Shown here one piece after another: positions 23,523-55,652 of a DNA stretch of 64,000 nt. How positions within the stretch are numbered: the first letter of the stretch is position 1; the number at the start of each line of letters is the position of its first letter. The stretch is taken from IMG/VR virus record IMGVR_UViG_3300013116_000108, positions 1 through 64,000 of that record; one strand, 5' to 3'. The position numbers were made by a program, and so were the translations under genes. The notes under the pieces are model-generated. The model ran no database searches, was not told where the DNA came from, and was given only the letters and a program-made list of their open reading frames with translations.

Positions 23523-24707
23523 TTAAACACCGTAATCTTCTTGTCCGCCTTCACGTTCAATATCTAGTGTAACACAATGCCATCCTGCGTCCCAGAAGTG
23601 CCTGTGTCTGTTTGGTACATGGATCATGTCAATACCATGTGAGTTGAATGTTTTTTCTAATTCTAAATTCTCAGCATTTACTACTGCTGTTTTTTCGTCT
23701 AGCATTAACAGATTAACATCAAAAACTGTTTCTTCTACAAACCCAACCCAATCGTCTAACCAGGTTTCTACAAAGTCTGTAAACTCAGCATTATCTTCTT
23801 CACCAGGCATCCACCATTTACCTTCGTTATGCTTTTTAATATCTAAAAACGGTCTTACTTGATTTAAGTTGCTTTCTGGTAAGAATATTTTATCCCAACC
23901 TGGGAAAGATTCAGCGTAATGTCCAATATCTTGTGTTGTTAATAATACGCCCGGTTTTAGCACATTAAAAACAGCATCATTATGACCACCAATAAAAACA
24001 CCTTTATAGTTGAACTGCGGATATGCCAATTCCATGTAGTCAGCAATATCTACTGCCTGTTGAGTATCAGCAAAACAAGTCTTTCCTACTCTAGTTAATT
24101 CCGGAGCACAAAACCCTGTCATTCTATCTGTTGTATGTTGCTCTTGTTCTAATTCTAATAATGTGTCAATATCGCTATCTTTAATACCTAACCGACCTAA
24201 TCTATTTCTGTGATTTGCTGTTGTTCTTGTAAACTTCTTTTTATTTTTAACAATGCTCCAATCAAAGTTATCACCAAACCATTTCTCAAGCAATGGAACC
24301 CATGGTTTGGATTCAAAAGCACTTCCAGTCATTACTACTTGATTGCCCATTGTAACAAAATCATCACGCGGATTAAGTGGTGGGACAGGTAGTTGATTTC
24401 TGCCCTTTTCATGTTGACCATGTTTATCACTTCCCATGCCCAACTTACCTTCTTCATCCAAATAGTCCATTATACTTGTTTTGTATCCAAGTTCTTCTGT
24501 TGTAGTAGTATATGTTTTAGCACCGAAGTCTTCTACTACCTTTTTTAAGTTATCTAAATCTTCTAATGTTTCACTAGCAATACGCTGAAGACAATCTCTT
24601 GCTTTAGAGTTTTTAACGTCTTCAAAAAATTCTGGAGGATAAGTTGTACCAATTACTAATTGTTTGAGCGGTTGGAATTCGCTCCATGAGTTTACTTTAT
24701 TTGTCAT
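23523..24707 (-). CDS. Amidinotransferase (pentein; glycine/inosamine-phosphate amidinotransferase-like) copy 1
   Basis: VNSWSEFQPLKQLVIG, PRDD, GGHND, FDVN, AGWHCVTLD. Confidence 0.85.
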   Translation of the reverse strand: MTNKVNSWSEFQPLKQLVIGTTYPPEFFEDVKNSKARDCLQRIASETLEDLDNLKKVVEDFGAKTYTTTTEELGYKTSIMDYLDEEGKLGMGSDKHGQHEKGRNQLPVPPLNPRDDFVTMGNQVVMTGSAFESKPWVPLLEKWFGDNFDWSIVKNKKKFTRTTANHRNRLGRLGIKDSDIDTLLELEQEQHTTDRMTGFCAPELTRVGKTCFADTQQAVDIADYMELAYPQFNYKGVFIGGHNDAVFNVLKPGVLLTTQDIGHYAESFPGWDKIFLPESNLNQVRPFLDIKKHNEGKWWMPGEEDNAEFTDFVETWLDDWVGFVEETVFDVNLLMLDEKTAVVNAENLELEKTFNSHGIDMIHVPNRHRHFWDAGWHCVTLDIEREGGQEDYGV

Positions 24708-25059
24708 TTAATGATTCTCTGTGTTTAGTTAAATCGTCGGGGAAATCCCTGTATAAGAAATGCTGTATTGTTTCCAGTTCAACATACTTGTTAAAGCCGT
24801 GATGCTCGTCTTCAATCTTGTTTTCGTTTGTTACTACACTAGACATGGCATCATCTAGTTGTTGCATATTTTTAAATTCCATATCAATACGAAATTCCGG
24901 TAATTCCATTGAACGAAATCCTAATTTCATTCTTGTAATTCTATATGATTCCATTCGTCCTGCTTGAACTAACTTATCTAAGAATTTAGTCATATATCTT
25001 ATGAATTCATGAGCTGTGACCTCTTCGGTATGATCTGAGTAAATAGTATAAACATCCAT
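24697..25059 (-). CDS. DUF6614-like dimeric alpha-beta barrel protein
   Basis: YRITRMKLGFR..LPEFRIDMEF..MQQLDDAM..LYRDFPD; start moved to MDVY. Confidence 0.6.
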   Translation of the reverse strand: MDVYTIYSDHTEEVTAHEFIRYMTKFLDKLVQAGRMESYRITRMKLGFRSMELPEFRIDMEFKNMQQLDDAMSSVVTNENKIEDEHHGFNKYVELETIQHFLYRDFPDDLTKHRESLNDK

Positions 25060-25125
25060 TTGATAACTTCCTTTTGTATTTAATATATAAGTAATTATCA
25101 GAGCATATAACAGAAAAACAAATTC

Positions 25126-25809
25126 ATGAAAGTTTATTACGATCACATTTACGGAACCATGGAAAACATGGATATCCGTTGTACAGAAATATTAGCAAAA
25201 CACGTTAAACCAGAAGAAGAATTAAAAGCATTAGACATGGGCTTTTTGTGGTCTAAGGTTGCTGACGATGGCGAAATATGGTATAACAGTCGTTCAGTTA
25301 GAGTTGATTTAAGCACCTGGAAAACAAGAAGAAGTAAGCCTGTTTGGAATAATGTAAAAGAACTTAAAAGAACTGATCCTCGCTGGCCTACTATGTACCG
25401 CGATTATATAAAAAGTAAAGGCTTGTATCCGTACCCAGGTGATGACGAACTACACAAAGAAAACAAACTGCTTGGCTACTTTGATGACAATGACAAATTA
25501 TTAGGATTGTCTAAATTACGTGAATATGTGGGAGCCTGGGAGACTTGTGTATTTGTACATGACCATTCTATTCCTAACTTCGGACGTATAACACTTGACC
25601 ATGAAATTCATCTTGCTACTATGTTAGGACATAAACACATTTACATTGGTTCTGGTTATGAGAAAACTTGTATATACAAAGGCAAGTTAAAAGGTTTTGA
25701 ATTTTGGACTGGCGAAAAATGGAATAGCAATAAAGAAGATTACATTAAACTTTGTCAGCGTGATAGTCTTGTTAGGACTTTACAGGATCTTCATGATGTC
25801 TCCAGTTAA
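25126..25809 (+). CDS. ATE1/Bpt-like aminoacyl-tRNA-protein transferase
   Basis: ALDMGF, SRSVRVDL, MYRDY, FGRITLDHEI..A..LGHKHIYIG.GY...CIYK...GFEFW match the ATE_N/ATE_C pattern (SLG...L..I..A...G..Y.YLGY...C.KM.YK). Confidence 0.7.
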   Translation: MKVYYDHIYGTMENMDIRCTEILAKHVKPEEELKALDMGFLWSKVADDGEIWYNSRSVRVDLSTWKTRRSKPVWNNVKELKRTDPRWPTMYRDYIKSKGLYPYPGDDELHKENKLLGYFDDNDKLLGLSKLREYVGAWETCVFVHDHSIPNFGRITLDHEIHLATMLGHKHIYIGSGYEKTCIYKGKLKGFEFWTGEKWNSNKEDYIKLCQRDSLVRTLQDLHDVSS

Positions 25810-26284
25810 CTACATCATCTAAATTTTCTTTACTCCAAACATCATAGTATCCTCTCTTTTTAAGTATACCACTAAACATTTGTATTTTACTCAATCGTTG
25901 CATTAACATAATAGGATATTTCCCATTGTTCATTATTATACCGTTAATGTTTTCTTCTTCATCTGGGTGGTCTTCTAACACCACAAAATCCTGCTCCATT
26001 AAATAAAGTTTATTTGTATTTTCTACCATAACACTTAAATTAGTAGAATTAATATTAGGAACAAAAATACAACATACATCTGTATCCTCATTCCAGCGTT
26101 TTGCTTTTTCTTTAAGGTATGAGTCAATTTTAATTTCACATACTTCAAACTCTACTTTGTTATCTATTATTGCCTGCTTGGCAAAAGGACATGGCGGAAA
26201 GTTGTTTAGGTCTGGATTTGGTTGCGATACAAAATCGTCTATCCATTTTAGGATATAAGTTTGTGCTTCTTCTAAATTAAACAT
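25772..26284 (-). CDS. DUF1415-like protein
   Basis: WI..FV..PN..LNNFPPCPFAK, EDHPD, YPIMLMQRL. Confidence 0.55.
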   Translation of the reverse strand: MFNLEEAQTYILKWIDDFVSQPNPDLNNFPPCPFAKQAIIDNKVEFEVCEIKIDSYLKEKAKRWNEDTDVCCIFVPNINSTNLSVMVENTNKLYLMEQDFVVLEDHPDEEENINGIIMNNGKYPIMLMQRLSKIQMFSGILKKRGYYDVWSKENLDDVVNWRHHEDPVKS

Positions 26285-27194
26285 TGAATGTATCCGAATG
26301 TATTTCTAAGTTAGTGTCATATAACTTTGCTATTACAATAGAATTAGAAGAATACCTAACCCTTGCTATAATAATCATAAGTTCGTTAAATGATGTTGTC
26401 AAATAAGTCATCATAGAAGTTAAAAAGTTTCCTATAAGCCAAACTGTATCAGTTGGATATAATTCTAACTTTTCTTTTAATTCATCTATTGTAGAAAATG
26501 TATCACTATGTTCGTAATCTTTAACAATTGATTTTATATCATCTGTAAAATTTTTGTGATACACAATATTTGTTTTTCCTGAGTTACGGAGTATGGATTT
26601 ATGTGACGGAGATACCTTCCATGGATTTTCTAAATAGATATCTTTGGGGAAATCATCAACAGTCCATTTAGTATAATCTATATCGTTTTGAGAACGATCA
26701 TAAATCATTGTATTATCTACAATAATTTTTAAGTTATTTGCCTTACAGCATTCTTCTATTTCAGCAATATTATTACTTTTATAAACATAACTATAATTAG
26801 GATTTATAATAAAGTACTTGTCGTGGTCTCCCCTAACTAGGCCCCAATCATTACCTAAACTTCCAATCTTATCTACTAAATCGTTTCTAAAAGATATGCC
26901 TAACATTACTCCTGGCTTAATAACTATAATACCATAAGTAGCAATTAAACTAGTATGTGCTGTCCACGATATTCTATGTAAATCATCACCTACGTTATAT
27001 GCTACATTGTCACATGATAAATCATTTGAAGACCCAGGCACCGTACATCTATAATAGTATGCTGTTCTTTGTGCTAAGTTATGTGTTTGTAAGTCAGCAT
27101 GATCGGAGTAAATTAAATATAAGCAACTGCCCTTGTTAGTAGTTGCCTTTTCCTCTATTGTATTTTTAGTATCACTTATTATTGTTAATGGCAC
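26277..27194 (-). CDS. Hypothetical protein
   Basis: 305 aa ORF, overlapping neighbours. Confidence 0.6.
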   Translation of the reverse strand: MPLTIISDTKNTIEEKATTNKGSCLYLIYSDHADLQTHNLAQRTAYYYRCTVPGSSNDLSCDNVAYNVGDDLHRISWTAHTSLIATYGIIVIKPGVMLGISFRNDLVDKIGSLGNDWGLVRGDHDKYFIINPNYSYVYKSNNIAEIEECCKANNLKIIVDNTMIYDRSQNDIDYTKWTVDDFPKDIYLENPWKVSPSHKSILRNSGKTNIVYHKNFTDDIKSIVKDYEHSDTFSTIDELKEKLELYPTDTVWLIGNFLTSMMTYLTTSFNELMIIIARVRYSSNSIVIAKLYDTNLEIHSDTFNV

Positions 27195-27658
27195 ACTAAT
27201 ATCGCTCCTTCTCGTAATGTTAATTTGCTTATGGATTCATTTAAAGAATCTAACCTAGTATTATTTGTTTTGTAAACTAATACATCGCTGTTATCAAAAG
27301 ATGTGATAGTATCTTTTTCAATATAAAATATTTTTTTAAAATTGGTAATCTCAACTTCTTGCGGTAATACTAAATTGTACAATATAATTTTCTTTAATTT
27401 TAAAAATTCAATCCATTGATCTAATATTTTAGTATTATTAAGTTCAACAAGGTACCCTTCTTTACTATTCCATATAACCATACCTTCAGATCCAACTTTA
27501 TATTTCATTGACCTTAATTCTATTATAAGTTTAATATCAAGTGTTTCTACTCTCAAGTGTGAAAGAGTATCTACTTCCTTGATATCAAATTCTTTATCAA
27601 TAGGCTTTGGTGTACTAGTCAATTTTCTATTGACGATTGAAGTTGTTTTGAGTGTCAT
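27185..27658 (-). CDS. Hypothetical protein
   Basis: 157 aa ORF after TAAATA motif. Confidence 0.6.
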   Translation of the reverse strand: MTLKTTSIVNRKLTSTPKPIDKEFDIKEVDTLSHLRVETLDIKLIIELRSMKYKVGSEGMVIWNSKEGYLVELNNTKILDQWIEFLKLKKIILYNLVLPQEVEITNFKKIFYIEKDTITSFDNSDVLVYKTNNTRLDSLNESISKLTLREGAILVCH

Positions 27659-27683
27659 GATTACCTTTATTTTAGGTATTTAT

Positions 27684-28619
27684 TTACGCGGCAATCGGTG
27701 CGGCTTGAAAACGTTTTCCAAAGATATTTTTAGTAAACAATCCCCAATCAGCATCTTTAGGATGCCATTCTTTTTTAGGAATTTCGCCGTTACTAAACTG
27801 CCATAGCCAACTACCAACACAACATGCTTCAGCATAATGCCAAGCACTAGCACCTTGTGTAGCAGGAACTCTAGTGTAGTAAAGTTCATTCTGAGGTTTC
27901 TTAAATTTAGTACCATTAATATTACAAAATATATCTAAGTAACTGTCTGTATGATTATACAAATGTCCTTCTTTACTATTGTGAACAATATCCCTATACT
28001 TCTTGCTCAGATACAACCAATTTAAACTATAATCATGGTTGTGATAAGGCAAATATAATGAGTGGCTTATAGTTTCAGCAATATAGTTTCTACTTCTTAA
28101 ACTTATTTCTGTAAAATGTTCTGTACCACTTTGTACAATATCTTTATATAACCTAGGATCTAAATTAGGAGCAATAGGTGTTCGGCCGTCCCACATATTT
28201 GGATTCATTCCAATATAATAATCAAGTCGGTCAACTGTTGAATATTCTCCTATCATTACTGCTGACATCATATCCATTAAACCTGAAAAAACGCCAATAC
28301 CATCTACTATGTTTTTTCCTGTTCCGTGAAACATGTCTGTTCTATTAATAGTAATAAGTGTATTATGCTCTGTCATAGCATTTGCTAGAGCATGAGTTAC
28401 ACCAAAGTCGCTATTACTAACAATATAATCGTGATTTTTTGTTATATCTTCTGGTGTAAAATTAGAAAACGGTAATGCTCCTTGTGAGAGTGTTTTACCT
28501 ACAGATGTATCATCAAACCAAGTACAAACAACTTCTGTATTAAACCGATTCTTTTGTCTAGTGATAACGCTTCTAATTGCGGATCCTAGTTGGCCGTTAC
28601 ATACTATTGCTACTCTCAT
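27684..28619 (-). CDS. Saccharopine dehydrogenase / carboxynorspermidine dehydrogenase-like NAD(P)-binding protein (degenerate)
   Basis: N-terminal Rossmann MRVAIVCNGQLG, G.GVFSGL.D, YIG pattern. Confidence 0.5.
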   Translation of the reverse strand: MRVAIVCNGQLGSAIRSVITRQKNRFNTEVVCTWFDDTSVGKTLSQGALPFSNFTPEDITKNHDYIVSNSDFGVTHALANAMTEHNTLITINRTDMFHGTGKNIVDGIGVFSGLMDMMSAVMIGEYSTVDRLDYYIGMNPNMWDGRTPIAPNLDPRLYKDIVQSGTEHFTEISLRSRNYIAETISHSLYLPYHNHDYSLNWLYLSKKYRDIVHNSKEGHLYNHTDSYLDIFCNINGTKFKKPQNELYYTRVPATQGASAWHYAEACCVGSWLWQFSNGEIPKKEWHPKDADWGLFTKNIFGKRFQAAPIAA

Positions 28620-28637
28620 TTGATCACCTCTATTTTG

Positions 28638-28650
28638 TATAAATATTTAT
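28638..28650. promoter_or_regulatory. Overlapping divergent T4-late-type motifs
   Basis: TATAAATATTTAT gives TATAAATA on + and ATAAATA on -, between divergent genes. Confidence 0.6.
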
Positions 28651-28700
28651 CGAAGATGTCTAATCAAATATTGAAAAAAGAATTAGGTAGGGAATAATTT

Positions 28701-28862: not shown

Positions 28863-28872
28863 AGGGAATATT

Positions 28873-42894: not shown

Positions 42895-43200
42895 CTAGTA
42901 CATTCTCTTTTGAGAAAATCCCCATTGTGCTTCTTGTTCACGTTGTTTCTTTAACCAACGATTACGGCCTGCTTTTTTGGCTAGTCTTTTCTTTTCGCTA
43001 GGTTTTATAAAATACTGCCTATCTCGACATTCTTGTAAAGTATTGTCTGCTTGGAGTTTTTTCTTTAGTTTTCTTAATGCCTTTGTGACATCATTGTTGT
43101 GAACTATAACAGTTGTTCCACCTGTTAAATCTTGAGCTCTTTTAGGTTGATTTCTATTACCAAAGCCTGCTCTGTTATTGCTTTTTCTATTTACAAACAT
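42895..43200 (-). CDS. rpsU: Ribosomal protein bS21
   Basis: V.V.NNDVTKALRKLKKK....E...RQYF.KPSEKKR. Confidence 0.88.
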   Translation of the reverse strand: MFVNRKSNNRAGFGNRNQPKRAQDLTGGTTVIVHNNDVTKALRKLKKKLQADNTLQECRDRQYFIKPSEKKRLAKKAGRNRWLKKQREQEAQWGFSQKRMY

Positions 43201-44363
43201 TAAGCCTCCTGTACGTCTGTGTCATTAATAATTACTTCCTTTCCTTTAAGTTGATCTAACTCGTAATAGTATTCAAGCAAAGTATTTTCTAATATACCTT
43301 TTAATGCTCTAGCACCTACCTTATATTGTAACGCAAGTTCGACTATTTTGTCAAGTGCTTTCTCCGAAAATATCAAACTAACATTATCTAAATCAAAATA
43401 GAACCTAGTTTGCTCAATTAGGTTATTATCAATATCAGCCAATACTTGTTTTAATTCATCTTTGGAAAGTTCTGTTGTTTGAACAACAACTGGAAAGCGA
43501 CCAATAAATTCAGGTATCATTCCAAAGTCAATTAACTCGCTTGAAATTAGTTTACTTTGGCCTCCGTGTGTTTCTCCAAACCCAATAGTATTTGTTTTTT
43601 GGCTGTCCATTCCAACAAATGCTCCACTTCCAATAAACAAAATCTTACTAGTATCTACTTCAATCATTTCTTGCTGTGGATGTTTTCTTCCACCTTGTGG
43701 TGCTACTCTAACAGTTGTACCTTCAACTAATTTTAACAATGCTTGTTGTACACCTTCGCCTGAAACATCTCTAGTAATTGAAACGTTCTCACTTTTCCTG
43801 CCAATTTTATCAATTTCATCTAAAAATACAATACCTTGTTCTGCTCTTGCTACATTGTAATCTACTTTCATTAGCAAAGAACTAATAATACTTTCAACAT
43901 CATCACCAACATACCCACTTTCAGTTAAACTTGTAGCATCAGCAATTACAATAGGCACATCTAAAAACTTAGCAATTTGTTTTGCCATAAAAGTTTTACC
44001 ACTACCAGTAGGACCAATTATTAATTGATTATTCTTTTCAATAGTACCTTTTCTATCATACATTAATCTCTTGTAGTGATTTACTACACCTACTGCCATA
44101 TGACGTTTTGCTTTATGTTGTCCAACTACTGTTTCGTCTAAAAATGCTACAATCTCTTTTGCTGTTTTGGGTTCTAATTCCTTTGCCCATTGCTTTGCCT
44201 TTTCATCTGTGAGGACTTTACTACACAAATCTATACATTCATCACAAATACCAACACCTTCTGCTACAATAATCTTGTATACTTGGTCTTTTGTTTTGCC
44301 ACAAAAATTACACTGACTGACTGAACGAATTTGATCTATACTAGTTGATTTATCATCTGTCAT
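43200..44363 (-). CDS. clpX: ATP-dependent Clp protease ATP-binding subunit ClpX
   Basis: Zinc finger CNFCGK..CDEC, GPTGSGKT, GYVG pore loop, DEIDK, RDVSGEGVQQALLK, RKH loop, IGF loop; start 44363 or 44393. Confidence 0.96.
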   Translation of the reverse strand: MTDDKSTSIDQIRSVSQCNFCGKTKDQVYKIIVAEGVGICDECIDLCSKVLTDEKAKQWAKELEPKTAKEIVAFLDETVVGQHKAKRHMAVGVVNHYKRLMYDRKGTIEKNNQLIIGPTGSGKTFMAKQIAKFLDVPIVIADATSLTESGYVGDDVESIISSLLMKVDYNVARAEQGIVFLDEIDKIGRKSENVSITRDVSGEGVQQALLKLVEGTTVRVAPQGGRKHPQQEMIEVDTSKILFIGSGAFVGMDSQKTNTIGFGETHGGQSKLISSELIDFGMIPEFIGRFPVVVQTTELSKDELKQVLADIDNNLIEQTRFYFDLDNVSLIFSEKALDKIVELALQYKVGARALKGILENTLLEYYYELDQLKGKEVIINDTDVQEA

Positions 44364-44730
44364 TTGAGAGCCTTTTTTGTAATATCCAGTCAACTGGAAC
44401 TGTTAGTTTTCTATTATTTAATGAATCGTAATTCTCTTCATGATGTATATCATCACACCACCAAACGTTTGGCATAGACATCAAGTACCCTGTAACAATT
44501 TTATTTTCATATTCATTGCTTACAATAACTACAGATGATCTAGTTGCTGTATTAACAATCCAATCAACTTTGCTATTTTGTTCGCCTATGTGTAAACTAT
44601 AATCGCCGTATTTAGGTAATTCCTTAATATATTGCTCAACTGTCCAGTTATCACAACCTACAAGGAATACACTTTCTTGTTTACCAAACCAATAATCTGG
44701 TTCTGTTACTACTGTTACATTATTGTCCAA
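44353..44730 (-). CDS. Hypothetical protein
   Basis: Operon-packed. Confidence 0.6.
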   Translation of the reverse strand: MDNNVTVVTEPDYWFGKQESVFLVGCDNWTVEQYIKELPKYGDYSLHIGEQNSKVDWIVNTATRSSVVIVSNEYENKIVTGYLMSMPNVWWCDDIHHEENYDSLNNRKLTVPVDWILQKRLSNDR

Positions 44731-49348: not shown

Positions 49349-49352
49349 CCTT

Positions 49353-50015: not shown

Positions 50016-50023
50016 AGTAATAT

Positions 50024-50665
50024 TTATTTCATGAATGTGTGGTTTCCTAAAGTACCAATAAATGTTTTAGTATCAGCCCAATTAGGATATACTAAATTGT
50101 GAGCATAATAATATACTGCTCCGTTTGTATTATCTTTTATTGACATTGTGCCAACTTCAAGAATATATATTGCTACTTCAACTGCTTCTCGCCATGCCCT
50201 AGCATTGCCTTCAATTGTTTGTCCAGTTTTTTCGTAGTTTGCCCAGATAACATCTGCTTGTCCATCACAATACCAACTAAATTGACATCTGTGTTTTCTA
50301 GGATAATAAACTCTTTCTGAATCTGGTAAATCGGCGTGTTGTTTAGTCTTCCACGATTCTCTTACAGGACCTTGTGTAACAACATCACAATAAGTTGACG
50401 GCCATCTTTTATCTAAAACTCTGTTTCTAGTAACATTACCTACTGCCGCCTTACCTGAAAAACTTTCTGCTCTTGCTTCAAAGTAAATATTTTCTGCTAG
50501 ACATTGTACTTCTGGGTGATGCTTATTTTGAACTCCTTCTGATGCTAGTATTTGCCAAAGGATATGTTCTGCTTGAGATGTTAAACTTGCTCCTGTAGTT
50601 GCCATTGCTGGCATAACACTAAAAGTTGTTAGCATTACTACTAACCCCGCCATTAGTTTCTTCAT
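50024..50665 (-). CDS. SleB-like cell wall hydrolase (Hydrolase_2)
   Basis: Signal peptide; CLAENIYFEARAE, CQFSWYCDG, YYYAH, GNHTF. Confidence 0.9.
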   Translation of the reverse strand: MKKLMAGLVVMLTTFSVMPAMATTGASLTSQAEHILWQILASEGVQNKHHPEVQCLAENIYFEARAESFSGKAAVGNVTRNRVLDKRWPSTYCDVVTQGPVRESWKTKQHADLPDSERVYYPRKHRCQFSWYCDGQADVIWANYEKTGQTIEGNARAWREAVEVAIYILEVGTMSIKDNTNGAVYYYAHNLVYPNWADTKTFIGTLGNHTFMK

Positions 50666-50699
50666 AATATGCTTCTTTCTTTATTGTTAATATAGTAAT

Positions 50700-50728
50700 A
50701 TTATAGCATATTTTGGCCAAACTGTCAA
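50700..50728 (-). promoter_or_regulatory. Sigma70-type promoter
   Basis: Perfect TTGACA-N17-TATAAT. Confidence 0.85.
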
Positions 50729-50778
50729 CCAATATTAGGGGCAGGTTTGTTGTAATAATGCAACAAATCTGTTAATTT

Positions 50779-51207
50779 TTATAGTTTTACTACACCTTCA
50801 CGAATTAATTTATCTCTATTAACAAGGTGCTTTGCTTGTATTTCTTCTTTAGATCCACCGAAGTATGCTACAGCATGACCTTCTTCAACAAGGATGTCAG
50901 TAACCATTTTACCGTTTTCAGTAACAAAGTCTCCTAAGACTCTACCAAACTTACCTTTCATGTCCTCGCCTTTTTTATTAATTTGAGTTTTTAGAACTGT
51001 AGTTTTACCTAACAATTCTTTAAGTCTGGTCTTTGATGCTAGTCCAAATTTCTTTTCTACTTTGTCTCTAGTTCTTGACTCCGGTGTGTCAATGCCCATT
51101 ATTCTAACTCTTTCATTGTTCAGCGAAATGCCAAACCCTAAATCAATGTCCACATCAACGGTGTCACCATCTACAACTTTTATAACTTTTGCTCTATATT
51201 CGTACAT
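50779..51207 (-). CDS. Thermonuclease (SNase-like)
   Basis: KVVDGDTVD, RIMGIDTPE, GKFGRVLG. Confidence 0.9.
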   Translation of the reverse strand: MYEYRAKVIKVVDGDTVDVDIDLGFGISLNNERVRIMGIDTPESRTRDKVEKKFGLASKTRLKELLGKTTVLKTQINKKGEDMKGKFGRVLGDFVTENGKMVTDILVEEGHAVAYFGGSKEEIQAKHLVNRDKLIREGVVKL

Positions 51208-51210
51208 TAT

Positions 51211-52251
51211 CTATTCTCTCCATAGTTCGCCGAAATCGAGATCGTCTTTTCTATTAAAGAGATCTTCAATGTTGCTTTGTCTTTCTATATCAAAAGTAAC
51301 ACAATGACTACCACCGTCCCAAAAATATTTGTGTCGCAAAGGACAATGTATTACTTCAATTCCATTTGTATTTAACAATCTTGTAACACTATCGTTTACA
51401 TGACTAGTAATAACAGTCTCAGGATTAATATGTAACATGTTAACTTCAAATGTAGTTTCTTGACTATAACCAATCCAATGTGTTAGATACTGCTTAATAA
51501 AATCTACTGCTTCTTGCTGTGGCTCGTTAACTAACTTAAAACTAAAATCTTCCCATAATCTATGATAACGTTCTAAATCGTTTGGCATATAATGAGGGAG
51601 TTTATGTATTTCCCAACCTTTGAACGTATCAGAATATTGATCTACTTCATAACGTGTTAGTAATAATCCAGGCTTTATAGGACATACACTACTATCACTA
51701 TGTCCCCCAATACTTGCTGTATGTATGTTTACATCTAGATGGACCAACTCTCTATATTTCTTTATCCATTCAACAAATGGCAAGTTTAATTTATTTTCTG
51801 TATCTATTAATAAATCTTTACCTAACCTAAAAACATCACTAGCACAAAAGTAATCAAAAAGTATAACATCATCTTTATATGATGCTAGTGCTTCTTTGCC
51901 ATAATTTTCCCAGGCCCAATTAGCACCAACAAATATTTTATCATGCCAACGTAATAAATGATTTCTTACAGCAAACGGTTGTCCTGGTAATTGTTTACGT
52001 TCTGCTATTGTTTGTTCAGCAAGAGTAAACCCTTCGTTATCCATGTATGTTTTAACGTCTGGTCGTACCACCTTAACACCTTGCGATTTTAATACCGAAC
52101 ACATGTTGTTTAAATCTTCTTGTGTTTCTTCTGTAATTTGTACTAGACAATTTTTTATTTGGGCAGGCAGTCCCTCGTAAACACTTGTAGGTAAAACGTC
52201 ACCCACTAATACTTTAGATAACTCTCCCCAATTATGAAAACAATTTTCCAT
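51211..52251 (-). CDS. Amidinotransferase copy 2
   Basis: WGELSKVLVG, AVRNH, GGHSD, FEVN, GGSHCVTFD. Confidence 0.8.
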   Translation of the reverse strand: MENCFHNWGELSKVLVGDVLPTSVYEGLPAQIKNCLVQITEETQEDLNNMCSVLKSQGVKVVRPDVKTYMDNEGFTLAEQTIAERKQLPGQPFAVRNHLLRWHDKIFVGANWAWENYGKEALASYKDDVILFDYFCASDVFRLGKDLLIDTENKLNLPFVEWIKKYRELVHLDVNIHTASIGGHSDSSVCPIKPGLLLTRYEVDQYSDTFKGWEIHKLPHYMPNDLERYHRLWEDFSFKLVNEPQQEAVDFIKQYLTHWIGYSQETTFEVNMLHINPETVITSHVNDSVTRLLNTNGIEVIHCPLRHKYFWDGGSHCVTFDIERQSNIEDLFNRKDDLDFGELWRE

Positions 52252-53000
52252 TATTCTAAACCCTTTATCAATTTTTTGTTTTCTACATTATACCATCGAA
52301 TTGAATTTACAATATCCTCATCCGGAATAACTGGTTCTAGTTTATAATAATCATCCACTTCTTTAAAACAACTAATATCACCATCAATTAAATCATCATA
52401 GTTGAAAATTATGTCGGCATATTTTACTTCTAAATCCATAATATTTCTAATTTTTAATCTTTCTATATGGGGTATTGGTAATAATTCCTTAGCACCTAAT
52501 TCTAAAGGTGAAGGCCCTTCTTCATGCCAAATTTCTTTTTCTCTGATATCCATATTTTTATCGTCACGTAAATCAAAGTGATCTTTCATTAATGATTTTA
52601 CATCTCTTAACTGACGACAAAACAATGCTGTCTTTATATTCTTTGTTGTGAGAAAAATATTAGGACATTCAATTCCTTTTACTTTTTTCATTGACTCATT
52701 TAAATTTGGAAAAATTTGATGGTCAAGTATAAAAGAATTTGTGTTTGGAACTTCAAACGTTTCTAGATATTTTTCTAATACTGTTGAGTCATAATGTTTA
52801 GTTTCTATCCATTCTTCACCATACTCTAAATCTATCTGTAACCTAGGCATTTCTGGTAGGCGCCAATATGTTTCAGGGAAGTGATATTCATTCCAGTAAC
52901 TATTAGATTTGGGCTTGTTTACAAATCCCCATCTCCAAAATAAAAGTCTTTGAAAAAAATGACCACCCATACCAGGTTGAAAAGAAAAGTATGCTATCAT
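52251..53000 (-). CDS. Hypothetical protein, P-loop/sulfotransferase-like N-terminus
   Basis: YFSFQPGMGGHFFQRLL. Confidence 0.45.
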   Translation of the reverse strand: MIAYFSFQPGMGGHFFQRLLFWRWGFVNKPKSNSYWNEYHFPETYWRLPEMPRLQIDLEYGEEWIETKHYDSTVLEKYLETFEVPNTNSFILDHQIFPNLNESMKKVKGIECPNIFLTTKNIKTALFCRQLRDVKSLMKDHFDLRDDKNMDIREKEIWHEEGPSPLELGAKELLPIPHIERLKIRNIMDLEVKYADIIFNYDDLIDGDISCFKEVDDYYKLEPVIPDEDIVNSIRWYNVENKKLIKGLE

Positions 53001-53016
53001 ACTAGTAATTATTCAT

Positions 53017-53054
53017 AAAAAAAAGCAGACACCATCTTAATGATATCTGCTTTT
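53017..53054 (-). terminator. Probable intrinsic terminator after porin
   Basis: AAAAGCAGA...TCTGCTTTT inverted repeat with T-run. Confidence 0.65.
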
Positions 53055-53074
53055 AAGATAAAACTACAAATAGT

Positions 53075-53983
53075 TTAGAATGAGTATTTAATTCCTAATG
53101 CCATTTGTGTAGTATCAGTACCAGAGTCAACATCAGTTAACTGGTACTCAGCGTATGTTGACAAAGATTCAGATAAGTCACGGCTAACTCCCGCTGTGTA
53201 GTAGTTGCCTGTACCTTCTTTATCTTGTAAACTAACAGCAATCGTGTTTCCAGCGATTGAAGTAGATGCTGAGTATTCAAGACCTGTTAAGTCTGTAGTT
53301 GCTGTATCTTTGTACGAGTATGTACCTGCTAGTGTAATACCAGCAACGTCAATACTTGCAGAAGCAATGTTGTACTTAACAACATTTACTTTGTCATCAA
53401 CCATAGCACCAGAAAGTGCTACTGGACCTACGTCCATTGAAGCAGATACATCAATAACATCAAGACCATCCTTACCTGTAGAACCATCAATTACTGCCAT
53501 AGCATTAATTGTAACTGGGCCTACTGAGTTAGAATATTTTACAGAGTTTGAACTACGGTCAGCATATTTAAATGTGGCGTTTCCACCATAGACGTTAAAT
53601 ATGTTAGTTTTACTAACTCCAGCACCTGGATTTGCTTGTCTACCAGCCGCTACTGAACCTAAAGTACCTGCATCTACACCAACGTATGCTAGTCTAGAGT
53701 CAAATGTATCAGATCCTGAATCATCGGCGTCAACGCCAACCTCTACTTTACCGAATCCAGTAAGACCGCCTTTTTCGTTGCCCTCAGCATCAACTAATGT
53801 TTCGCTAAATTCAACACCGATCTTAGATCCGTTGTTTTGTGCCTTTAAGTGTGCCTTTCCTGTAGAATCATCATCGTTAGAAACCATGTAATTTACAGAA
53901 CCATAAACGTTAACATCAGCAAGTACCGGAGCACTTAAAAATGATAAGCCTAAAGCAACTGTGGCAATTAGTATATTTTTCAT
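53075..53983 (-). CDS. Gram-negative trimeric porin
   Basis: Signal peptide; VNVYGSVN, SKIG, SRLAYVG, GRQ, SVKY; ends LGIKYSF. Confidence 0.9.
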   Translation of the reverse strand: MKNILIATVALGLSFLSAPVLADVNVYGSVNYMVSNDDDSTGKAHLKAQNNGSKIGVEFSETLVDAEGNEKGGLTGFGKVEVGVDADDSGSDTFDSRLAYVGVDAGTLGSVAAGRQANPGAGVSKTNIFNVYGGNATFKYADRSSNSVKYSNSVGPVTINAMAVIDGSTGKDGLDVIDVSASMDVGPVALSGAMVDDKVNVVKYNIASASIDVAGITLAGTYSYKDTATTDLTGLEYSASTSIAGNTIAVSLQDKEGTGNYYTAGVSRDLSESLSTYAEYQLTDVDSGTDTTQMALGIKYSF

Positions 53984-54037
53984 ATTTTTTTCCTTTACAT
54001 ATATGTAAAGACCCTCGCCACTAGAGGCGAGAGCCCT

Positions 54038-54341
54038 CTTCTAGAAGATTTCTGTTGATAGGCATCTTCCAAACCCCGAGCAACTATGCCGCTAAGGCAA
54101 AGTCCTCATGAAACACATTATCGTTTGCGTTTATACGTTTTGTTCGCGTTAACCGAGCTTACATCCGGGCAACTCCACTCTCCTAATAACTACCTGTCGA
54201 TCCTTTTTCAACCCCATCATAAACACATTCATATAATCACACCAAAATCTGTGTTGTTACTTTTGGAATGTGTTTATGGTGGAGTTGCTGGGTACCGCCC
54301 CCAGGTCCAGATTAGCGTTTGAATAACTTCATCGTTACGAC
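54038..54341 (-). ncRNA. ssrA: Circularly permuted two-piece tmRNA; acceptor piece ends CCA at 54277, coding piece starts at 54215; tag ANDNVFHEDFALAA (54128-54084)
   Basis: ...GGCGGTACCCAGCAACTCCACCA precedes GGGGTTGAAAAAGGATCGAC; acceptor GGGGTTG/CAACTCC with G3:U70; 13-bp inverted repeat bounding the intervening segment; outer ends approximate. Confidence 0.93.
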
Positions 54342-54345
54342 ATTA

Positions 54346-54374
54346 TTTATAACATAAAGTAGAAAAAATGTCAA
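54346..54374 (-). promoter_or_regulatory. Composite sigma70 and late promoter for tmRNA
   Basis: TTGACA-N17-TATAAA whose -10 extends to TATAAATA. Confidence 0.8.
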
Positions 54375-54410
54375 GAAAGTGATTTGAAAAAACGAAGGAA
54401 AACATAGGTT

Positions 54411-55652
54411 TTATATGTCGTAATCGGTTTGCTCACCAACTCTGTGTATATCTAATGTGTTACAATGCCAGCCTCCGTCCCAAAAGAAACGATGCCTTAA
54501 TGGAACAAAAATTGGTGTGATGCCTCGTTGTTCTAATTGATCTTTTAAATTTTTATCGTTACTATTAATGACAACGTGCTTTTCGTCTAATACTAAAACG
54601 TTAACATCAAAAATAGTTTCGTCAACTTGTCCGTGCCAATTGTCTAACCATTTGTTAATAAAGTTTTCTAGTTGTGGATTCTCTTCGACTTCCGGTGTCC
54701 AGTAACAACCTTGATTATTATGTCTTAAATTAATTGCTGATTTAACTTCCTTGCCCCAACTTGGTTGATCAAACCAAATAATATCCCAACCTTTAAAAAT
54801 GTCAGCATAAGGTTTGAACCAAGGAGTAGCAATTACTAATCCAGGACGAACTACACTAAACACACTATCGTTATGTCCGCCTATAAAAATTTTATGAAAG
54901 TCAAAGTTTTTGTAATTAGGTTCTAAAAATTCTTCTACTACTTCTGGTGTTTGCCACACATCTACTAAAACTTTATTTCCTAGTCTTGTTAAGTTTGGAG
55001 CACACCACCCATTAAGCGGTGTAGAGTCTTGTAACTTTTCTAACTCGTCCATGTCCTCAACATCAATAGACAAGTGATGTCTCTCTGCCCAACTTTTAAC
55101 GTTTTTAATACTACGTCTAAAGTTAATATTCTTTTCATATATGCTATTATCAACCACAGCATCGCCAAACATTTCTTTATACTTTATAGCAGATAGGTTA
55201 GTACTGTATACATGAGCCTGTGTAATTAATATCTTATCTCCCATTACAAGAGCATCATCTCTTATTGCTAATGGCGGTTGTGGTATTCCTGTACTAGAAT
55301 CGCGTGATAAACGTATATTACGATGGTTTACACCAAAGTTACTTGCTTCTGGAAAGTCTTTTATAGGACTACTAACACCTATTTCACCTGTTTGCCAGTT
55401 AGTGTAGTCTAGTATACTATCTTGGTATCCTAATTCTTTTGGAGTAAGTTGTATTACATCAATGCCGTGGCTTAATAATGTTTGCTTAAAGTATTCAATA
55501 TCTTCTCTTGTTTCTCGAAGTATCTTTGCTAAGCCGTTTTTAATAGTTGTATTTTTAATACCGTCTAAGAAACTATCCTCAAAGACTGACCCTACCATTA
55601 CAGTTTGTAGTGGTTGAAATTCATCCCAAGAATTGACAGTTAACTTTGTCAA
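54411..55652 (-). CDS. Amidinotransferase copy 3
   Basis: VNSWDEFQPLQTVMVG, IRDD, GGHND, FDVN, GGWHCNTLD. Confidence 0.85.
   Translation of the reverse strand: MTKLTVNSWDEFQPLQTVMVGSVFEDSFLDGIKNTTIKNGLAKILRETREDIEYFKQTLLSHGIDVIQLTPKELGYQDSILDYTNWQTGEIGVSSPIKDFPEASNFGVNHRNIRLSRDSSTGIPQPPLAIRDDALVMGDKILITQAHVYSTNLSAIKYKEMFGDAVVDNSIYEKNINFRRSIKNVKSWAERHHLSIDVEDMDELEKLQDSTPLNGWCAPNLTRLGNKVLVDVWQTPEVVEEFLEPNYKNFDFHKIFIGGHNDSVFSVVRPGLVIATPWFKPYADIFKGWDIIWFDQPSWGKEVKSAINLRHNNQGCYWTPEVEENPQLENFINKWLDNWHGQVDETIFDVNVLVLDEKHVVINSNDKNLKDQLEQRGITPIFVPLRHRFFWDGGWHCNTLDIHRVGEQTDYDI

What the first reader, a model, noticed from the sequence alone, without database searches (positions are those of the whole stretch)
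23523..55652. Three divergent amidinotransferase paralogs with intact catalytic residues
Copies at 23523, 51211 and 54411 all keep His (GGH.D) and Cys (G.HC), and two keep RDD while copy 2 has RNH. Known: penteins of the GATM/StrB1 family move an amidino group from Arg to an amine acceptor. Three retained copies in different neighbourhoods (ATE cassette; nuclease plus sulfotransferase-like gene; between RNR operon and tmRNA) imply different acceptors, e.g. guanidinylation of polyamines, sugars, proteins or DNA substituents. No such phage pathway is known to me.
Basis: partly seen in the sequence, partly recalled or inferred. Interest (0 to 1): 0.7.

Follow-up and report, generated by a model that had tools for sequence, protein, structure and literature searches.

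The report
Phage amidinotransferase-like paralogs, arginine-tailoring module
A marine jumbo phage carries four (not three) diverged copies of a virus-specific amidinotransferase-like enzyme, one of them in a conserved four-gene set that looks built for chemistry on arginine's guanidino group, a pathway nobody has characterised in a virus.

Summary
The three ORFs exist at the stated coordinates and are true paralogs (25-36% identity, E 2e-30 to 7e-90). A fourth copy lies outside the window at 101-102 kb of the same 204-kb viral contig. Sequence and predicted structure place them with the amidinotransferases (AGAT, StrB1, AmtA, HsvA, SxtG), about eight to nine orders of magnitude better than arginine deiminase or DDAH. 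They belong to a large, unnamed, essentially virus-only subfamily. "Intact catalytic residues" is only partly right. The nucleophile Cys, the His and the H-x-D Asp are invariant. The AGAT triad acid Asp254 is Cys in copies 1-3 and Ser in copy 4, and copy 2 has Asn for Asp170. All three window copies are under purifying selection. Copy 1 sits in a conserved tetrad: DUF6614, the enzyme, an ATE_C-like aminoacyl-tRNA transferase homologue, and a 170-aa protein with the fold of AglA, a heme-thiolate guanidine N-hydroxylase. This echoes argolaphos biosynthesis. Copy 3 occupies a recurrent slot in the RNR-glutaredoxin operon. The AdoMetDC adjacency is not conserved. Phage "glycine amidinotransferase" genes beside radical-SAM clusters were noted in 2010 and 2025, but never tested. 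Substrates remain unknown. Verdict: new variant of a known kind.

The parts
23523..24707 (-). Copy 1, amidinotransferase-like pentein (394 aa); motifs R114-D115-D116, C200 at the AGAT Asp254 position, H242-x-D244, H377-C378
   Evidence: AF2 model pLDDT 84.7. Foldseek top hits are AGAT, HsvA, SxtG and StrB1. dN/dS 0.067 against L008.
24697..25059 (-). DUF6614 protein. The ORF lister extends it to 25146 with a GTG start, but the conserved family starts at the Met at 25059. It overlaps the start of copy 1 by 11 nt. Dabb/EthD-like alpha+beta barrel.
   Evidence: Pfam PF20319, E 3.8e-23. Adjacent to the enzyme in 46 of 83 loci. Fold relatives. dN/dS 0.076. Complex prediction with copy 1 gave no answer.
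25126..25809 (+). ATE_C-like (arginyl-tRNA-protein transferase C-domain, GNAT-fold) protein, 227 aa, always on the opposite strand to the other three genes
   Evidence: Family profile against PDB ATE1, E 1.5e-5. 23 of 28 family members hit Pfam ATE_C, best 9.7e-7; the window's own copy does not hit on its own. Present in 47 of 83 loci. dN/dS 0.085.
25772..26284 (-). 170-aa partner of the DUF1415/DUF6875 group, with an AglA-like (YqcI/YcgG) sandwich fold and an invariant Cys32 in a C-P-x-A motif. Putative heme-thiolate protein.
   Evidence: Present in 51 of 83 loci, median distance 0 to the enzyme. AF2 pLDDT 93.4. VIA-align puts AglA at Z 7.7-8.1 over 145-152 residues, next hit Z 4.2. AFDB clusters. 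Invariant columns. No sequence-level match to AglA or PF08892.
51211..52251 (-). Copy 2, amidinotransferase-like pentein (346 aa), R-N-H variant; lacks the roughly 60-residue insert of copies 1 and 3
   Evidence: Its own long-branch clade with the L064 ortholog, both with Asn. dN/dS 0.113. Best PDB sequence hit HsvA, E 6e-13.
52251..53000 (-). 249-aa gene directly upstream of copy 2; sulfotransferase-like only as a weak fold lead
   Evidence: No Pfam or PHROG hit. Atlas structure rows to sulfotransferase families at TM 0.54-0.60, through a proxy model. Syntenic in L064.
50779..51207 (-). Staphylococcal-nuclease homologue directly downstream of copy 2
   Evidence: Pfam SNase, E 5.4e-14. Same order in L064.
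54411..55652 (-). Copy 3, amidinotransferase-like pentein (413 aa, TTG start), same clade as copy 1
   Evidence: dN/dS 0.12-0.13.
55656..59843 (-). Conserved upstream operon of copy 3: nrdA (57444-59843), nrdB (56261-57394), glutaredoxin (55982-56251), 110-aa PHROG 527 protein (55656-55988)
   Evidence: Pfam, PHROG. An nrdA-nrdB-Grx-[enzyme]-110aa order, or a close variant of it, recurs in 17-19 loci with enzymes from two different clades.
53993..54369 (-). tmRNA gene downstream of copy 3 (context only)
   Evidence: ARAGORN, tag peptide ANDNVFHEDFALAA.
22813..23190 (-). AdoMetDC/SpeD-family pyruvoyl decarboxylase homologue flanked by tRNA-Ala (22738-22813) and tRNA-Thr (23424-23499). Context only, not a conserved partner.
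   Evidence: Pfam AdoMet_dc, E 4.5e-15. PDB AdoMetDC, E 1.9e-5. tRNAs. Absent next to copy-1 orthologs elsewhere.

Best explanation
The window encodes three, and the genome four, functional paralogs of a virus-specific subfamily of amidinotransferase-like penteins. Each most likely works by covalent catalysis. The invariant C-terminal Cys attacks the guanidino carbon of an arginine-type donor held by the two conserved Asp residues, forms an S-amidino (thiouronium) intermediate with help from the invariant His, and passes the amidino group to an amine acceptor.

The paralogs are not redundant. Copy 1 is the enzyme of a conserved four-gene guanidine-tailoring module. Its partners are an ATE_C-like protein that probably uses aminoacyl-tRNA (Arg-tRNA) to attach an amino acid to an amine, a 170-aa protein with the fold of the heme-thiolate guanidine N-hydroxylase AglA, and a DUF6614 alpha+beta-barrel protein. 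Together these would build or remodel an arginine-derived guanidino compound or adduct, possibly N-oxygenated. Copy 3 is a recent offshoot of the copy-1 clade placed in the RNR-glutaredoxin operon. Copies 2 and 4 are older, stand-alone lineages, copy 2 with Asn at the first guanidinium-binding position.

Shown: paralogy, family placement, residue conservation, gene linkage, purifying selection. Inferred: amidino transfer rather than hydrolysis, arginine as donor, heme binding by the 170-aa protein, tRNA dependence of the ATE-like protein, and any product.
For: Family placement. PDB sequence hits are amidinotransferases only; the four-paralog profile aligns to AGAT over its full length at E 2.6e-22. 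A confident AF2 model matches AGAT, HsvA, SxtG and StrB1 at E 4e-18 to 4e-15, and GATM, StrB1/2 and AmtA in Swiss-Prot at 1e-16 to 1e-18. Deiminases and DDAH score 1e-9 to 1e-10 or weaker.

Catalytic competence. Across 266 diverse members, Cys378 is kept in 262, His242 in 263, Asp244 in 264, Arg114 in 260 and Asp115 in 246. dN/dS is 0.07-0.13 for the three window copies.

Non-redundancy. The copies fall in separate clades with distinct conserved contexts. Multi-copy loci recur in 15 of 82 other viral loci and in Marine virus AG-345-D19.

Module. The 170-aa gene is present in 51, the ATE-like gene in 47 and DUF6614 in 46 of 83 loci, at median distances of 0-446 nt. ATE_C homology. AglA fold: Z about 8, standing alone above Z 4.2, with an invariant Cys. 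AglA hydroxylates the guanidine of an Arg adduct that AglC makes in a reaction supplied with Arg, tRNA, ATP and ArgRS (PMC12866846; PMC8976061). This is the same pairing of activities as in the phage module.
Against: The position of the AGAT triad acid Asp254 is not conserved: Asp in only 54 of 266 members, Cys in copies 1-3, Ser in copy 4. The catalytic apparatus therefore differs from characterised amidinotransferases. Which acid, if any, supports the His is unknown.

No Pfam model reaches its threshold. The AglA relationship is by fold only, at a Z the tool itself calls middling, with no sequence match to PF08892. The window's own ATE-like protein does not hit ATE_C individually. The predicted complex of copy 1 with DUF6614 gave no answer. 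Metatranscriptome contigs gave no coverage of copy 2 and only short divergent pieces over copy 3.

In many relatives the module sits inside radical-SAM-rich islands that this genome lacks around copy 1, so the pathway may be larger elsewhere or may act on a macromolecule. No substrate or product has been identified.
Confidence: 0.45

Rival explanations
1. They are guanidino-group hydrolases (deiminase- or dihydrolase-type penteins), not transferases, for example removing or converting arginine-type guanidino groups on a metabolite or a protein.
For: All penteins share the Cys-His core and the two guanidinium-binding Asp residues, so the conserved residues do not discriminate. Weak C-terminal hits to arginine deiminase, DDAH and arginine dihydrolase models. 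Loss of the canonical triad acid shows the active site has been remodelled.
Against: Both sequence and structure place them eight to nine orders of magnitude closer to every known amidinotransferase than to any hydrolase. The deiminase hits cover only the last 55-60 residues and lie far below the curated cut-offs.
Confidence: 0.2
2. The enzymes, with the radical-SAM, 2OG-oxygenase, DegT and glycosyltransferase genes that surround their relatives, modify a macromolecule: a virion or tail-fibre protein, a ribosomal peptide, or a surface glycan. Possible reactions are Lys to homoarginine or Arg to ornithine on a protein, or guanidinylation of an amino sugar.
For: In most related loci the tetrad is embedded in islands with up to five or six radical SAM/SPASM genes, B12-radical SAM, Asp/Asn beta-hydroxylase-type oxygenases, DegT, GT2 and a kinase/cytidylyltransferase. 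ATE-type enzymes are known to act on protein N-termini. The S-SCSM2R homologue ORF266 was detected in the virion proteome alongside a 2OG oxygenase (PMC12801897) and lies next to KdsA/KdsB. Pelagimyophage radical-SAM cassettes lie in the host-recognition cluster (PMC7029224). A basal DegT-linked clade keeps the canonical Asp and recalls StrB1 with StrS-type aminotransferases.
Against: This genome has no radical SAM, DegT or GT gene near any of the four copies. No precursor peptide or target is identifiable. The virion detection may reflect carry-over, as the S-SCSM2R authors themselves say.
Confidence: 0.2
3. Copy 1 is an HsvA-like polyamine amidinotransferase working with the adjacent AdoMetDC homologue to make guanidinylated polyamines or agmatine-related compounds.
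For: An AdoMetDC/SpeD-family gene lies 330 nt downstream of copy 1. Marine-phage SpeD homologues can be pyruvoyl arginine or ornithine decarboxylases (PMC9992855; PMC10407285). HsvA, a polyamine amidinotransferase, is the best PDB sequence hit of copy 2.
Against: The adjacency is not conserved: it is absent in L008 (89% identical enzyme) and in all other related loci. The two genes are separated by an 82-aa ORF and a tRNA gene. The 260-aa neighbour shows no aminopropyltransferase similarity. The virosphere polyamine survey reports no amidinotransferase.
Confidence: 0.08
4. Copy 3, and perhaps others, acts in nucleotide or DNA metabolism, for example guanidinylating a base substituent or a nucleotide, as suggested by its place in the RNR operon.
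For: An enzyme of this family sits between Grx and the 110-aa gene downstream of nrdA-nrdB, or in a close variant of that order, in 17-19 loci. The slot is filled by two different clades.
Against: No DNA-modification gene (hydroxymethylase, glycosyltransferase, transglycosylase, kinase) is linked to it. The next conserved upstream gene is a tail-fibre or depolymerase-like protein. The slot may simply be a permissive insertion site. No guanidino DNA modification made by a pentein is known (my own knowledge).
Confidence: 0.05

Closest known systems
L-arginine:glycine amidinotransferase (AGAT/GATM) and the bacterial amidinotransferases StrB1, AmtA, HsvA, SxtG, CyrA
   Same: Pentein fold. Full-length profile alignment. 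C-terminal H-C nucleophile motif, H-x-D motif, R-D motif. These are the best sequence and structure matches.
   Different: 15-19% identity. The triad acid Asp254 is not conserved: Cys in copies 1-3, Ser in copy 4. The family has its own invariant residues (D214, E326, N332, D373, R385 in copy-1 numbering) and a Trp-rich helical insert at about residues 276-330. No Pfam membership. Essentially restricted to viruses. Activity untested.
Radical-SAM plus 'glycine amidinotransferase' modules of Campylobacter phages CP220/CPt10, and the 'antibiotic synthesis genes' of cyanophage S-SCSM2R
   Same: Distant members of the same protein family (23-33% identity over 48-94% of the query). The same association with radical SAM, DegT-type aminotransferases and 2OG oxygenases is seen in most marine relatives of copy 1.
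   Different: Those reports are annotations without functional data. This genome has four copies and none lies in a radical-SAM island. The DUF6614 / ATE-like / AglA-fold tetrad is not mentioned in the passages of those papers that I searched.
Argolaphos pathway pair AglC (Arg-tRNA-dependent transferase) plus AglA (YqcI/YcgG heme-thiolate guanidine N-hydroxylase); also DcsA, GntA, ChmN, Mhr24
   Same: The copy-1 module pairs an aminoacyl-tRNA-transferase-type GNAT-fold protein with a protein of the AglA sandwich fold that carries an invariant Cys near the position of the AglA heme ligand.
   Different: The relationship to AglA is by fold only. The phage protein is 170 aa against about 240-274 aa, and falls in DUF1415/DUF6875 rather than PF08892. 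No phosphonate genes are present. The argolaphos gene table, as far as one search shows it, lists no amidinotransferase.
Eukaryotic and bacterial arginyl- or leucyl-tRNA-protein transferases (ATE1, Bpt)
   Same: The C-terminal GNAT-like catalytic domain is recognisably homologous at family level.
   Different: Only 140-230 aa. No match to anything but the C-terminal domain, so the ATE N-terminal domain appears absent. Substrate unknown.

Membership tests
Amidinotransferases (AGAT/StrB1/AmtA/HsvA/SxtG branch of the pentein superfamily) | Pentein beta/alpha-propeller fold, closest to amidinotransferases rather than hydrolases | tested here: met
   AF2 model pLDDT 84.7. Foldseek E 4e-18 to 4e-15 for the four solved amidinotransferase families, against 2e-9 or weaker for ADI and DDAH. 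TM-scores are only 0.55-0.65 because of inserts.
Amidinotransferases (AGAT/StrB1/AmtA/HsvA/SxtG branch of the pentein superfamily) | Nucleophilic Cys (AGAT Cys407) in a C-terminal G-x-H-C-x-T-x-D motif | tested here: met
   Present in all four copies; Cys kept in 262 of 266 family members.
Amidinotransferases (AGAT/StrB1/AmtA/HsvA/SxtG branch of the pentein superfamily) | His303-x-Asp305 motif (general base and second guanidinium-binding Asp) | tested here: met
   H242-x-D244 in copy 1 and its equivalents in all copies; 263 and 264 of 266 members.
Amidinotransferases (AGAT/StrB1/AmtA/HsvA/SxtG branch of the pentein superfamily) | First guanidinium-binding Asp (AGAT Asp170, in a P-R-D motif) | tested here: inconclusive
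   Asp in copies 1, 3 and 4; Asn in copy 2 and in 16 of 266 members scattered over several subgroups. The register here was read from the motif, because HMMER's alignment is shifted at this point.
Amidinotransferases (AGAT/StrB1/AmtA/HsvA/SxtG branch of the pentein superfamily) | Triad acid (AGAT Asp254 in F-D-A-A-D) supporting the catalytic His | tested here: not met
   Ungapped alignment to AGAT, HsvA, StrB1 and SxtG puts Cys (copies 1-3) or Ser (copy 4) at this position. Asp is found in only 54 of 266 members.
Amidinotransferases (AGAT/StrB1/AmtA/HsvA/SxtG branch of the pentein superfamily) | Score above the curated Pfam (PF02274) or NCBIfam threshold | tested here: not met
   Copy 2 scores 22.3 bits against 22.8; copies 1 and 3 have no hit. 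NCBIfam hits lie far below their cut-offs.
Amidinotransferases (AGAT/StrB1/AmtA/HsvA/SxtG branch of the pentein superfamily) | Ping-pong transfer of an amidino group from L-arginine to an amine, releasing ornithine | not testable with these tools
   Needs enzyme assays.
YqcI/YcgG heme-thiolate guanidine N-hydroxylases (AglA, DcsA, GntA), for the 170-aa partner at 25772-26284 | AglA-type sandwich fold | tested here: met
   VIA-align Z 7.7-8.1, 145-152 of 170 residues aligned, next unrelated hit Z 4.2. Foldseek E is only 0.05-0.08. The tool notes that a Z near 8 can be a common arrangement.
YqcI/YcgG heme-thiolate guanidine N-hydroxylases (AglA, DcsA, GntA), for the 170-aa partner at 25772-26284 | Axial Cys ligand (AglA Cys44) and heme binding | tested here: inconclusive
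   Invariant Cys32 in a C-P-x-A motif just before a helix. By the aligned ranges (model 1 to chain 16) it falls near AglA Cys44, but no residue-level alignment was available. Heme binding is not testable here.
YqcI/YcgG heme-thiolate guanidine N-hydroxylases (AglA, DcsA, GntA), for the 170-aa partner at 25772-26284 | Sequence membership of PF08892 | tested here: not met
   No PF08892 hit in any of 26 members; weak DUF6875 and DUF1415 hits instead. No AglA hit with the family profile.
Arginyl-tRNA-protein transferases (ATE1/Bpt), for the 227-aa gene at 25126-25809 | ATE C-terminal catalytic (GNAT-like) domain | tested here: met
   Family profile against solved ATE1, E 1.5e-5. 23 of 28 members hit PF04377, best 9.7e-7, all below or near the gathering score. 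The window's copy does not hit individually.
Arginyl-tRNA-protein transferases (ATE1/Bpt), for the 227-aa gene at 25126-25809 | ATE N-terminal domain and use of Arg-tRNA on protein N-termini | not tested
   The proteins are only 140-230 aa and only the C-terminal domain was matched. tRNA dependence needs an assay.

The most novel reading that the evidence does not exclude
The copy-1 tetrad is the first viral pathway for N-oxygenated or otherwise tailored guanidines. An ATE-like enzyme would arginylate an amine from Arg-tRNA. A heme-thiolate AglA-fold enzyme would N-hydroxylate the guanidine. The pentein would move the (hydroxy)amidino group. The result would be a hydroxyguanidine- or hydroxyurea-like or metal-binding small molecule, or a tagged macromolecule, made during infection. 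The recurrent placement of a sister copy inside the RNR-glutaredoxin operon would then hint at a link to ribonucleotide-reductase chemistry, since hydroxyurea and hydroxyguanidine are radical-quenching RNR inhibitors (my own knowledge).
Probability: 0.2. Interest if true: 0.85.

Novelty: new variant of a known kind. Interest (0 to 1): 0.62.

Why it matters
If the reading is right, a large family found almost only in viruses (at least 567 relatives in IMG/VR; 234 clusters at 50% identity with E no greater than 1e-30) carries out guanidino-group chemistry during infection. It would do so with a catalytic apparatus that has dispensed with the canonical triad acid.

The link to an aminoacyl-tRNA transferase homologue and an AglA-fold protein gives a concrete, testable proposal for a module that has sat unannotated in hundreds of marine phage genomes. 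It also gives a handle on the radical-SAM/amidinotransferase islands noted in Campylobacter phages in 2010 and never explained.

It would extend virus-encoded metabolism from polyamines and nucleotides to arginine-derived specialised metabolites or protein modifications. It would also provide new biocatalysts for making guanidines.

Tried and rejected
(1) Polyamine link through the adjacent AdoMetDC homologue. The adjacency is unique to this genome. The 260-aa neighbour shows no aminopropyltransferase similarity.

(2) A redox-switch idea: Cys200 pairing with the catalytic Cys, served by the adjacent glutaredoxin-like genes. Dropped. The 170-aa partner is AglA-fold rather than glutaredoxin (Grx E 0.31 with the family profile). 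Tetrad-linked enzymes of the other clade have Asp, Ser or His at position 200.

(3) Homology between the unannotated neighbours of copy 2 (249 aa) and copy 4 (202 aa): none.

(4) Predicted complex of copy 1 with DUF6614: score 0.00, no verdict either way.

(5) Transcription evidence. Four marine metatranscriptomes cover the porin-like gene and tmRNA well. They do not cover copy 2, and cover copy 3 only by 150-240-nt pieces at 91-93% identity. This is uninformative for expression, because these are contigs and DNA carry-over is possible.

(6) Search for a cellular origin or context. Only 12 loci in 185,579 species genomes, all on MAG contigs of 2-73 kb with 25-38% identity (apart from one 38-residue fragment), so no informative bacterial operon.

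(7) PDB sequence searches for DUF6614 and the 170-aa family: nothing significant.

(8) ClpP next to the phage ClpX: not found by PDB sequence search.

(9) I could not inspect model coordinates, so I could not determine which acidic residue (D214, E326 or D373) replaces Asp254.

Full report
**1. What is there**

The window is the first 64 kb of a 204,100-bp IMG/VR viral contig. CheckV rates it about 56% complete, and GC is about 34%. Its replicative helicase is closest to those of cultured jumbo phages: Pseudomonas PA5oct at 52%, then Sinorhizobium Phosso and Agrobacterium Atu_ph07.

- Copy 1: 23523-24707(-), 394 aa
- Copy 2: 51211-52251(-), 346 aa
- Copy 3: 54411-55652(-), 413 aa

They align end to end. 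Copy 1/copy 3 is 36% identical (E 7e-90), copy 1/copy 2 is 26% (E 1e-46), and copy 2/copy 3 is 25% (E 2e-30). A profile of the three found a fourth copy of 350 aa at 101060-102112(-) of the same contig, outside the window. Its neighbours are methyltransferase-like genes, a P-loop protein, a RecA/UvsX homologue and a TctA transporter.

**2. Which family**

No Pfam or NCBIfam model reaches its threshold. Only the last 55-60 residues give weak hits to arginine deiminase or DDAH models. PHROGs places all three in phrog_25854, function unknown.

Against the PDB by sequence, the only significant hits are amidinotransferases: HsvA, StrB1, SxtG and AGAT. A four-paralog profile aligns to AGAT over its full length at E 2.6e-22.

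A confident AlphaFold model of copy 1 (pLDDT 84.7, pTM 0.89) matches AGAT, HsvA, SxtG and StrB1 at E 4e-18 to 4e-15. In Swiss-Prot it matches every reviewed amidinotransferase (GATM, StrB1/2, AmtA) at 1e-16 to 1e-18. Arginine deiminase, DDAH and agmatine deiminase begin only at 1e-9 to 1e-10.

**3. Catalytic residues**

I aligned 123 and then 266 diverse relatives. In copy-1 numbering, these residues are essentially invariant:
- the nucleophile Cys378 (AGAT Cys407)
- His242 and Asp244 (AGAT His303 and Asp305)
- Arg114

Asp115 (AGAT Asp170) is kept in 246 of 266. It is Asn in copy 2 and in 15 other members from several subgroups.

The third member of the AGAT triad, Asp254, is not conserved. 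AGAT F-D-A-A-D-F-I-R-A-G-R-D aligns without gaps to copy 2 F-C-A-S-D-V-F-R-L-G-K-D. Copies 1-3 therefore have Cys and copy 4 has Ser at that position. Across the family it is Asp in only 54 of 266.

The family has its own near-invariant residues instead: D214, E326, N332, D373 and R385. It also has a Trp-rich helical insert at roughly residues 276-330, which has the lowest model confidence. I could not inspect coordinates, so which acid, if any, takes over the role of Asp254 is open. 'Intact catalytic residues' is thus only partly correct.

**4. Are the copies maintained?**

Nei-Gojobori estimates against orthologs in related contigs give dN/dS of 0.067 for copy 1, 0.113 for copy 2 and 0.12-0.13 for copy 3. 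The three tetrad partners give 0.08-0.19. All are under purifying selection.

**5. Distribution**

- The family has 346 hits in the 5.8-billion-protein collection. Almost all are unnamed marine metagenome proteins.
- It has 234 representative clusters at E no greater than 1e-30.
- It has at least 567 relatives in IMG/VR.
- In 185,579 prokaryotic species genomes only 12 loci matched, all on MAG contigs of 2-73 kb.
- Among deposited phages it occurs only in the uncultured Marine virus AG-345-D19 (three contigs, three copies), Synechococcus phage S-SCSM2R and Campylobacter CP220-type phages.

It is effectively a virus-specific subfamily.

**6. Phylogeny and neighbourhoods**

I called genes in 82 related loci plus the whole contig and clustered all proteins. 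I then built a maximum-likelihood tree of 61 non-redundant family members, labelled by context and key residues. Rows shorter than 300 aa, or at least 90% identical to a kept row, were left out.

- **Copies 1 and 3:** they share one well-supported clade (100/95) in which Cys200 is invariant. Copy 3 and its L066 ortholog are sister to tetrad-linked genes.
- **Copy 2:** it forms a long-branch clade of its own with its L064 ortholog. Both have Asn.
- **Copy 4:** it falls in a loose long-branch group.
- **DegT-linked clade:** this basal clade keeps the canonical Asp at position 200.
- **Copy number:** 15 of the 82 other loci hold two or three family members within about 20 kb.

Two contexts are conserved.

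(i) A tetrad around copy-1-type genes:
- DUF6614, in 46 loci, usually overlapping the start of the enzyme
- the enzyme itself
- a 170-aa gene, in 51 loci at median distance 0
- a 140-230-aa gene on the opposite strand, in 47 loci

In most marine relatives the tetrad is embedded in islands with several radical SAM/SPASM genes, a B12-radical SAM, Asp/Asn beta-hydroxylase-type oxygenases, DegT, GT2, a GDSL hydrolase and a kinase/cytidylyltransferase. This genome has none of these near copy 1.

(ii) The order nrdA-nrdB-Grx-[enzyme]-110aa, or a close variant, in 17-19 loci. The slot is filled by enzymes of two different clades. The next conserved upstream gene is a pectate-lyase-like, Mtd_N-bearing tail-fibre or depolymerase protein.

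L064 is syntenic with the window from copy 3 through the porin-like gene, the 249-aa gene, copy 2, the nuclease and the cell-wall hydrolase. The AdoMetDC homologue beside copy 1 is not found next to any ortholog.

**7. The tetrad partners**

- **Opposite-strand gene (25126-25809):** it belongs to a family whose profile hits solved ATE1 arginyltransferases at E 1.5e-5 over the C-terminal GNAT-like domain. Of 28 members, 23 hit Pfam ATE_C, best 9.7e-7. The window's copy does not hit on its own.
- **DUF6614:** a Dabb/EthD-like alpha+beta barrel.
- **170-aa protein:** it belongs to the DUF1415/DUF6875 group, which in bacteria is fused to tryptophan 2,3-dioxygenase or ATP-grasp domains. Its AlphaFold model (pLDDT 93.4) has no significant Foldseek PDB hit. 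However, the highest-probability rows are AglA, and VIA-align puts five AglA entries at Z 7.7-8.1 with 145-152 of 170 residues aligned. The next hit is Z 4.2.

AglA is the prototype YqcI/YcgG enzyme. It is a thiolate-ligated (Cys44) heme protein that N-hydroxylates the guanidine of aminomethylphosphonate-arginine. That substrate is made by AglC in a reaction supplied with arginine, tRNA, ATP and ArgRS (PMC12866846). The argolaphos cluster encodes GNAT-superfamily proteins that its authors describe as aminoacyl-tRNA-dependent ligases (PMC8976061).

The phage family has an invariant Cys32 in a C-P-x-A motif just before a helix. By the aligned ranges this is near the AglA ligand. There is no sequence-level match to PF08892, so this is a fold-level inference.

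**8. Mechanism proposed**

Shown:
- four maintained paralogs of an amidinotransferase-branch pentein with the Cys/His/Asp core
- tight, conserved linkage of the copy-1 lineage to an ATE_C-like protein, an AglA-fold protein and DUF6614

Inferred:
- Each paralog forms a Cys-S-amidino intermediate from an arginine-type donor and transfers it to an amine.
- In the tetrad, the ATE-like protein attaches arginine (or another amino acid) from aminoacyl-tRNA to an amine.
- The AglA-fold protein oxidises a guanidine nitrogen.
- The pentein either makes the guanidine or moves the (hydroxy)amidino group.

The order of steps, the substrates and the product are unknown. Where the module lies in radical-SAM islands, it may be part of a larger pathway, or may act on a protein, peptide or glycan.

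**9. Rivals**

- **Hydrolase rather than transferase:** cannot be excluded from sequence, but is disfavoured by family placement.
- **Macromolecule modification:** supported by the island gene content in relatives, by detection of the S-SCSM2R homologue ORF266 in the virion proteome, and by its KdsA/KdsB and 2OG-oxygenase neighbours.
- **Polyamine guanidinylation:** disfavoured, because the adjacency is not conserved.
- **Nucleotide or DNA modification:** only the RNR slot speaks for it.

**10. What was already known**

- Timms et al. 2010 noted that CP220 and CPt10 each carry an interchangeable cluster of five radical-SAM genes plus a putative glycine amidinotransferase (PMC2853527).
- The S-SCSM2R paper (2025) lists a 'glycine amidinotransferase' and an 'inosamine amidinotransferase'. 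It calls the latter, a DegT-like AHBA synthase and a radical SAM 'antibiotic synthesis genes' (PMC12801897).
- The survey of polyamine enzymes in the virosphere does not mention amidinotransferases (PMC9992855).
- My literature searches found no experimental work on any phage member. They also found no description of the tetrad, of the lost triad acid, or of the family's restriction to viruses.

**11. Null results**

- The predicted complex of copy 1 with DUF6614 gave no verdict.
- Metatranscriptome contigs cover the porin-like gene and tmRNA. They do not cover copy 2, and cover copy 3 only by short divergent pieces.
- The neighbours of copies 2 and 4 are unrelated to each other.

**12. Verdict**

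The family assignment is right. Distinct roles for the paralogs are plausible and supported by phylogeny, context and selection, but no substrate is established. The most informative new result is the conserved arginine/guanidine-tailoring tetrad around copy 1. I rate it a new variant of a known kind, with interest 0.62.

Noticed in passing
G000:C1:101060-102112 (-), outside the window (L004:1492-2544): A fourth amidinotransferase-like paralog (350 aa; P-R-D-H, G-Y-H-S-D and G-I-H-C motifs; Ser at the AGAT Asp254 position). It is flanked by a SAM-methyltransferase-like 197-aa gene and a P-loop 202-aa gene.
   Followed up: yes
window 43200-44393 (-): Phage-encoded ClpX homologue (AAA_2, ClpX zinc finger). 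It sits in the same genome as a tmRNA and an ATE-like gene, so the phage carries several genes linked to protein tagging and degradation. No ClpP was detected in the two downstream ORFs by PDB sequence search.
   Followed up: partly
window 53075-53983 (-) and 53993-54369 (-): A porin-like, signal-peptide-bearing beta-barrel gene (weak Pfam Phage_OMP hit) and the adjacent tmRNA (tag ANDNVFHEDFALAA). These are the only parts of 50.5-56.4 kb well represented in marine metatranscriptome contigs, from runs of three independent studies (92-96% identity, about 1.1-kb contigs); a fourth study's run covers them only in short pieces.
   Followed up: partly
window 22738-23499 (-): A 125-aa AdoMetDC/SpeD-family pyruvoyl decarboxylase homologue (E-T-S-H self-cleavage motif) sits between tRNA-Ala and tRNA-Thr. 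Marine-phage homologues of this family have been shown to be arginine or ornithine decarboxylases; which activity this one has is unknown.
   Followed up: partly
G000:C1:106807-108246 (-) (L101:12808-14247): A full-length TctA tripartite tricarboxylate transporter subunit (Pfam E 1e-97) encoded by the phage.
   Followed up: no
window 18467-19477 (-): UvdE UV-damage endonuclease homologue (Pfam E 1.2e-41).
   Followed up: no
window 60280-61839 (-): A 519-aa protein with an Mtd_N (major tropism determinant N-terminal) domain and a pectate-lyase-like beta-helix, likely a tail fibre or depolymerase. It is conserved upstream of the RNR operon in related phages.
   Followed up: no
L010, L014, L018, L021, L029 and about 30 other IMG/VR loci, roughly 10 kb either side of the enzyme: Large islands with up to five or six tandem radical SAM/SPASM genes, a B12-radical SAM, two Asp/Asn beta-hydroxylase-type oxygenases, DegT, GT2, a GDSL hydrolase, an APS-kinase/cytidylyltransferase-like gene, a 74-aa ORF and several unannotated families. 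The gene order is shuffled between phages. The function is unknown.
   Followed up: partly
window 50024-50665 (-): Cell-wall hydrolase (Hydrolase_2, SleB-like) with a signal peptide, two genes downstream of copy 2.
   Followed up: no
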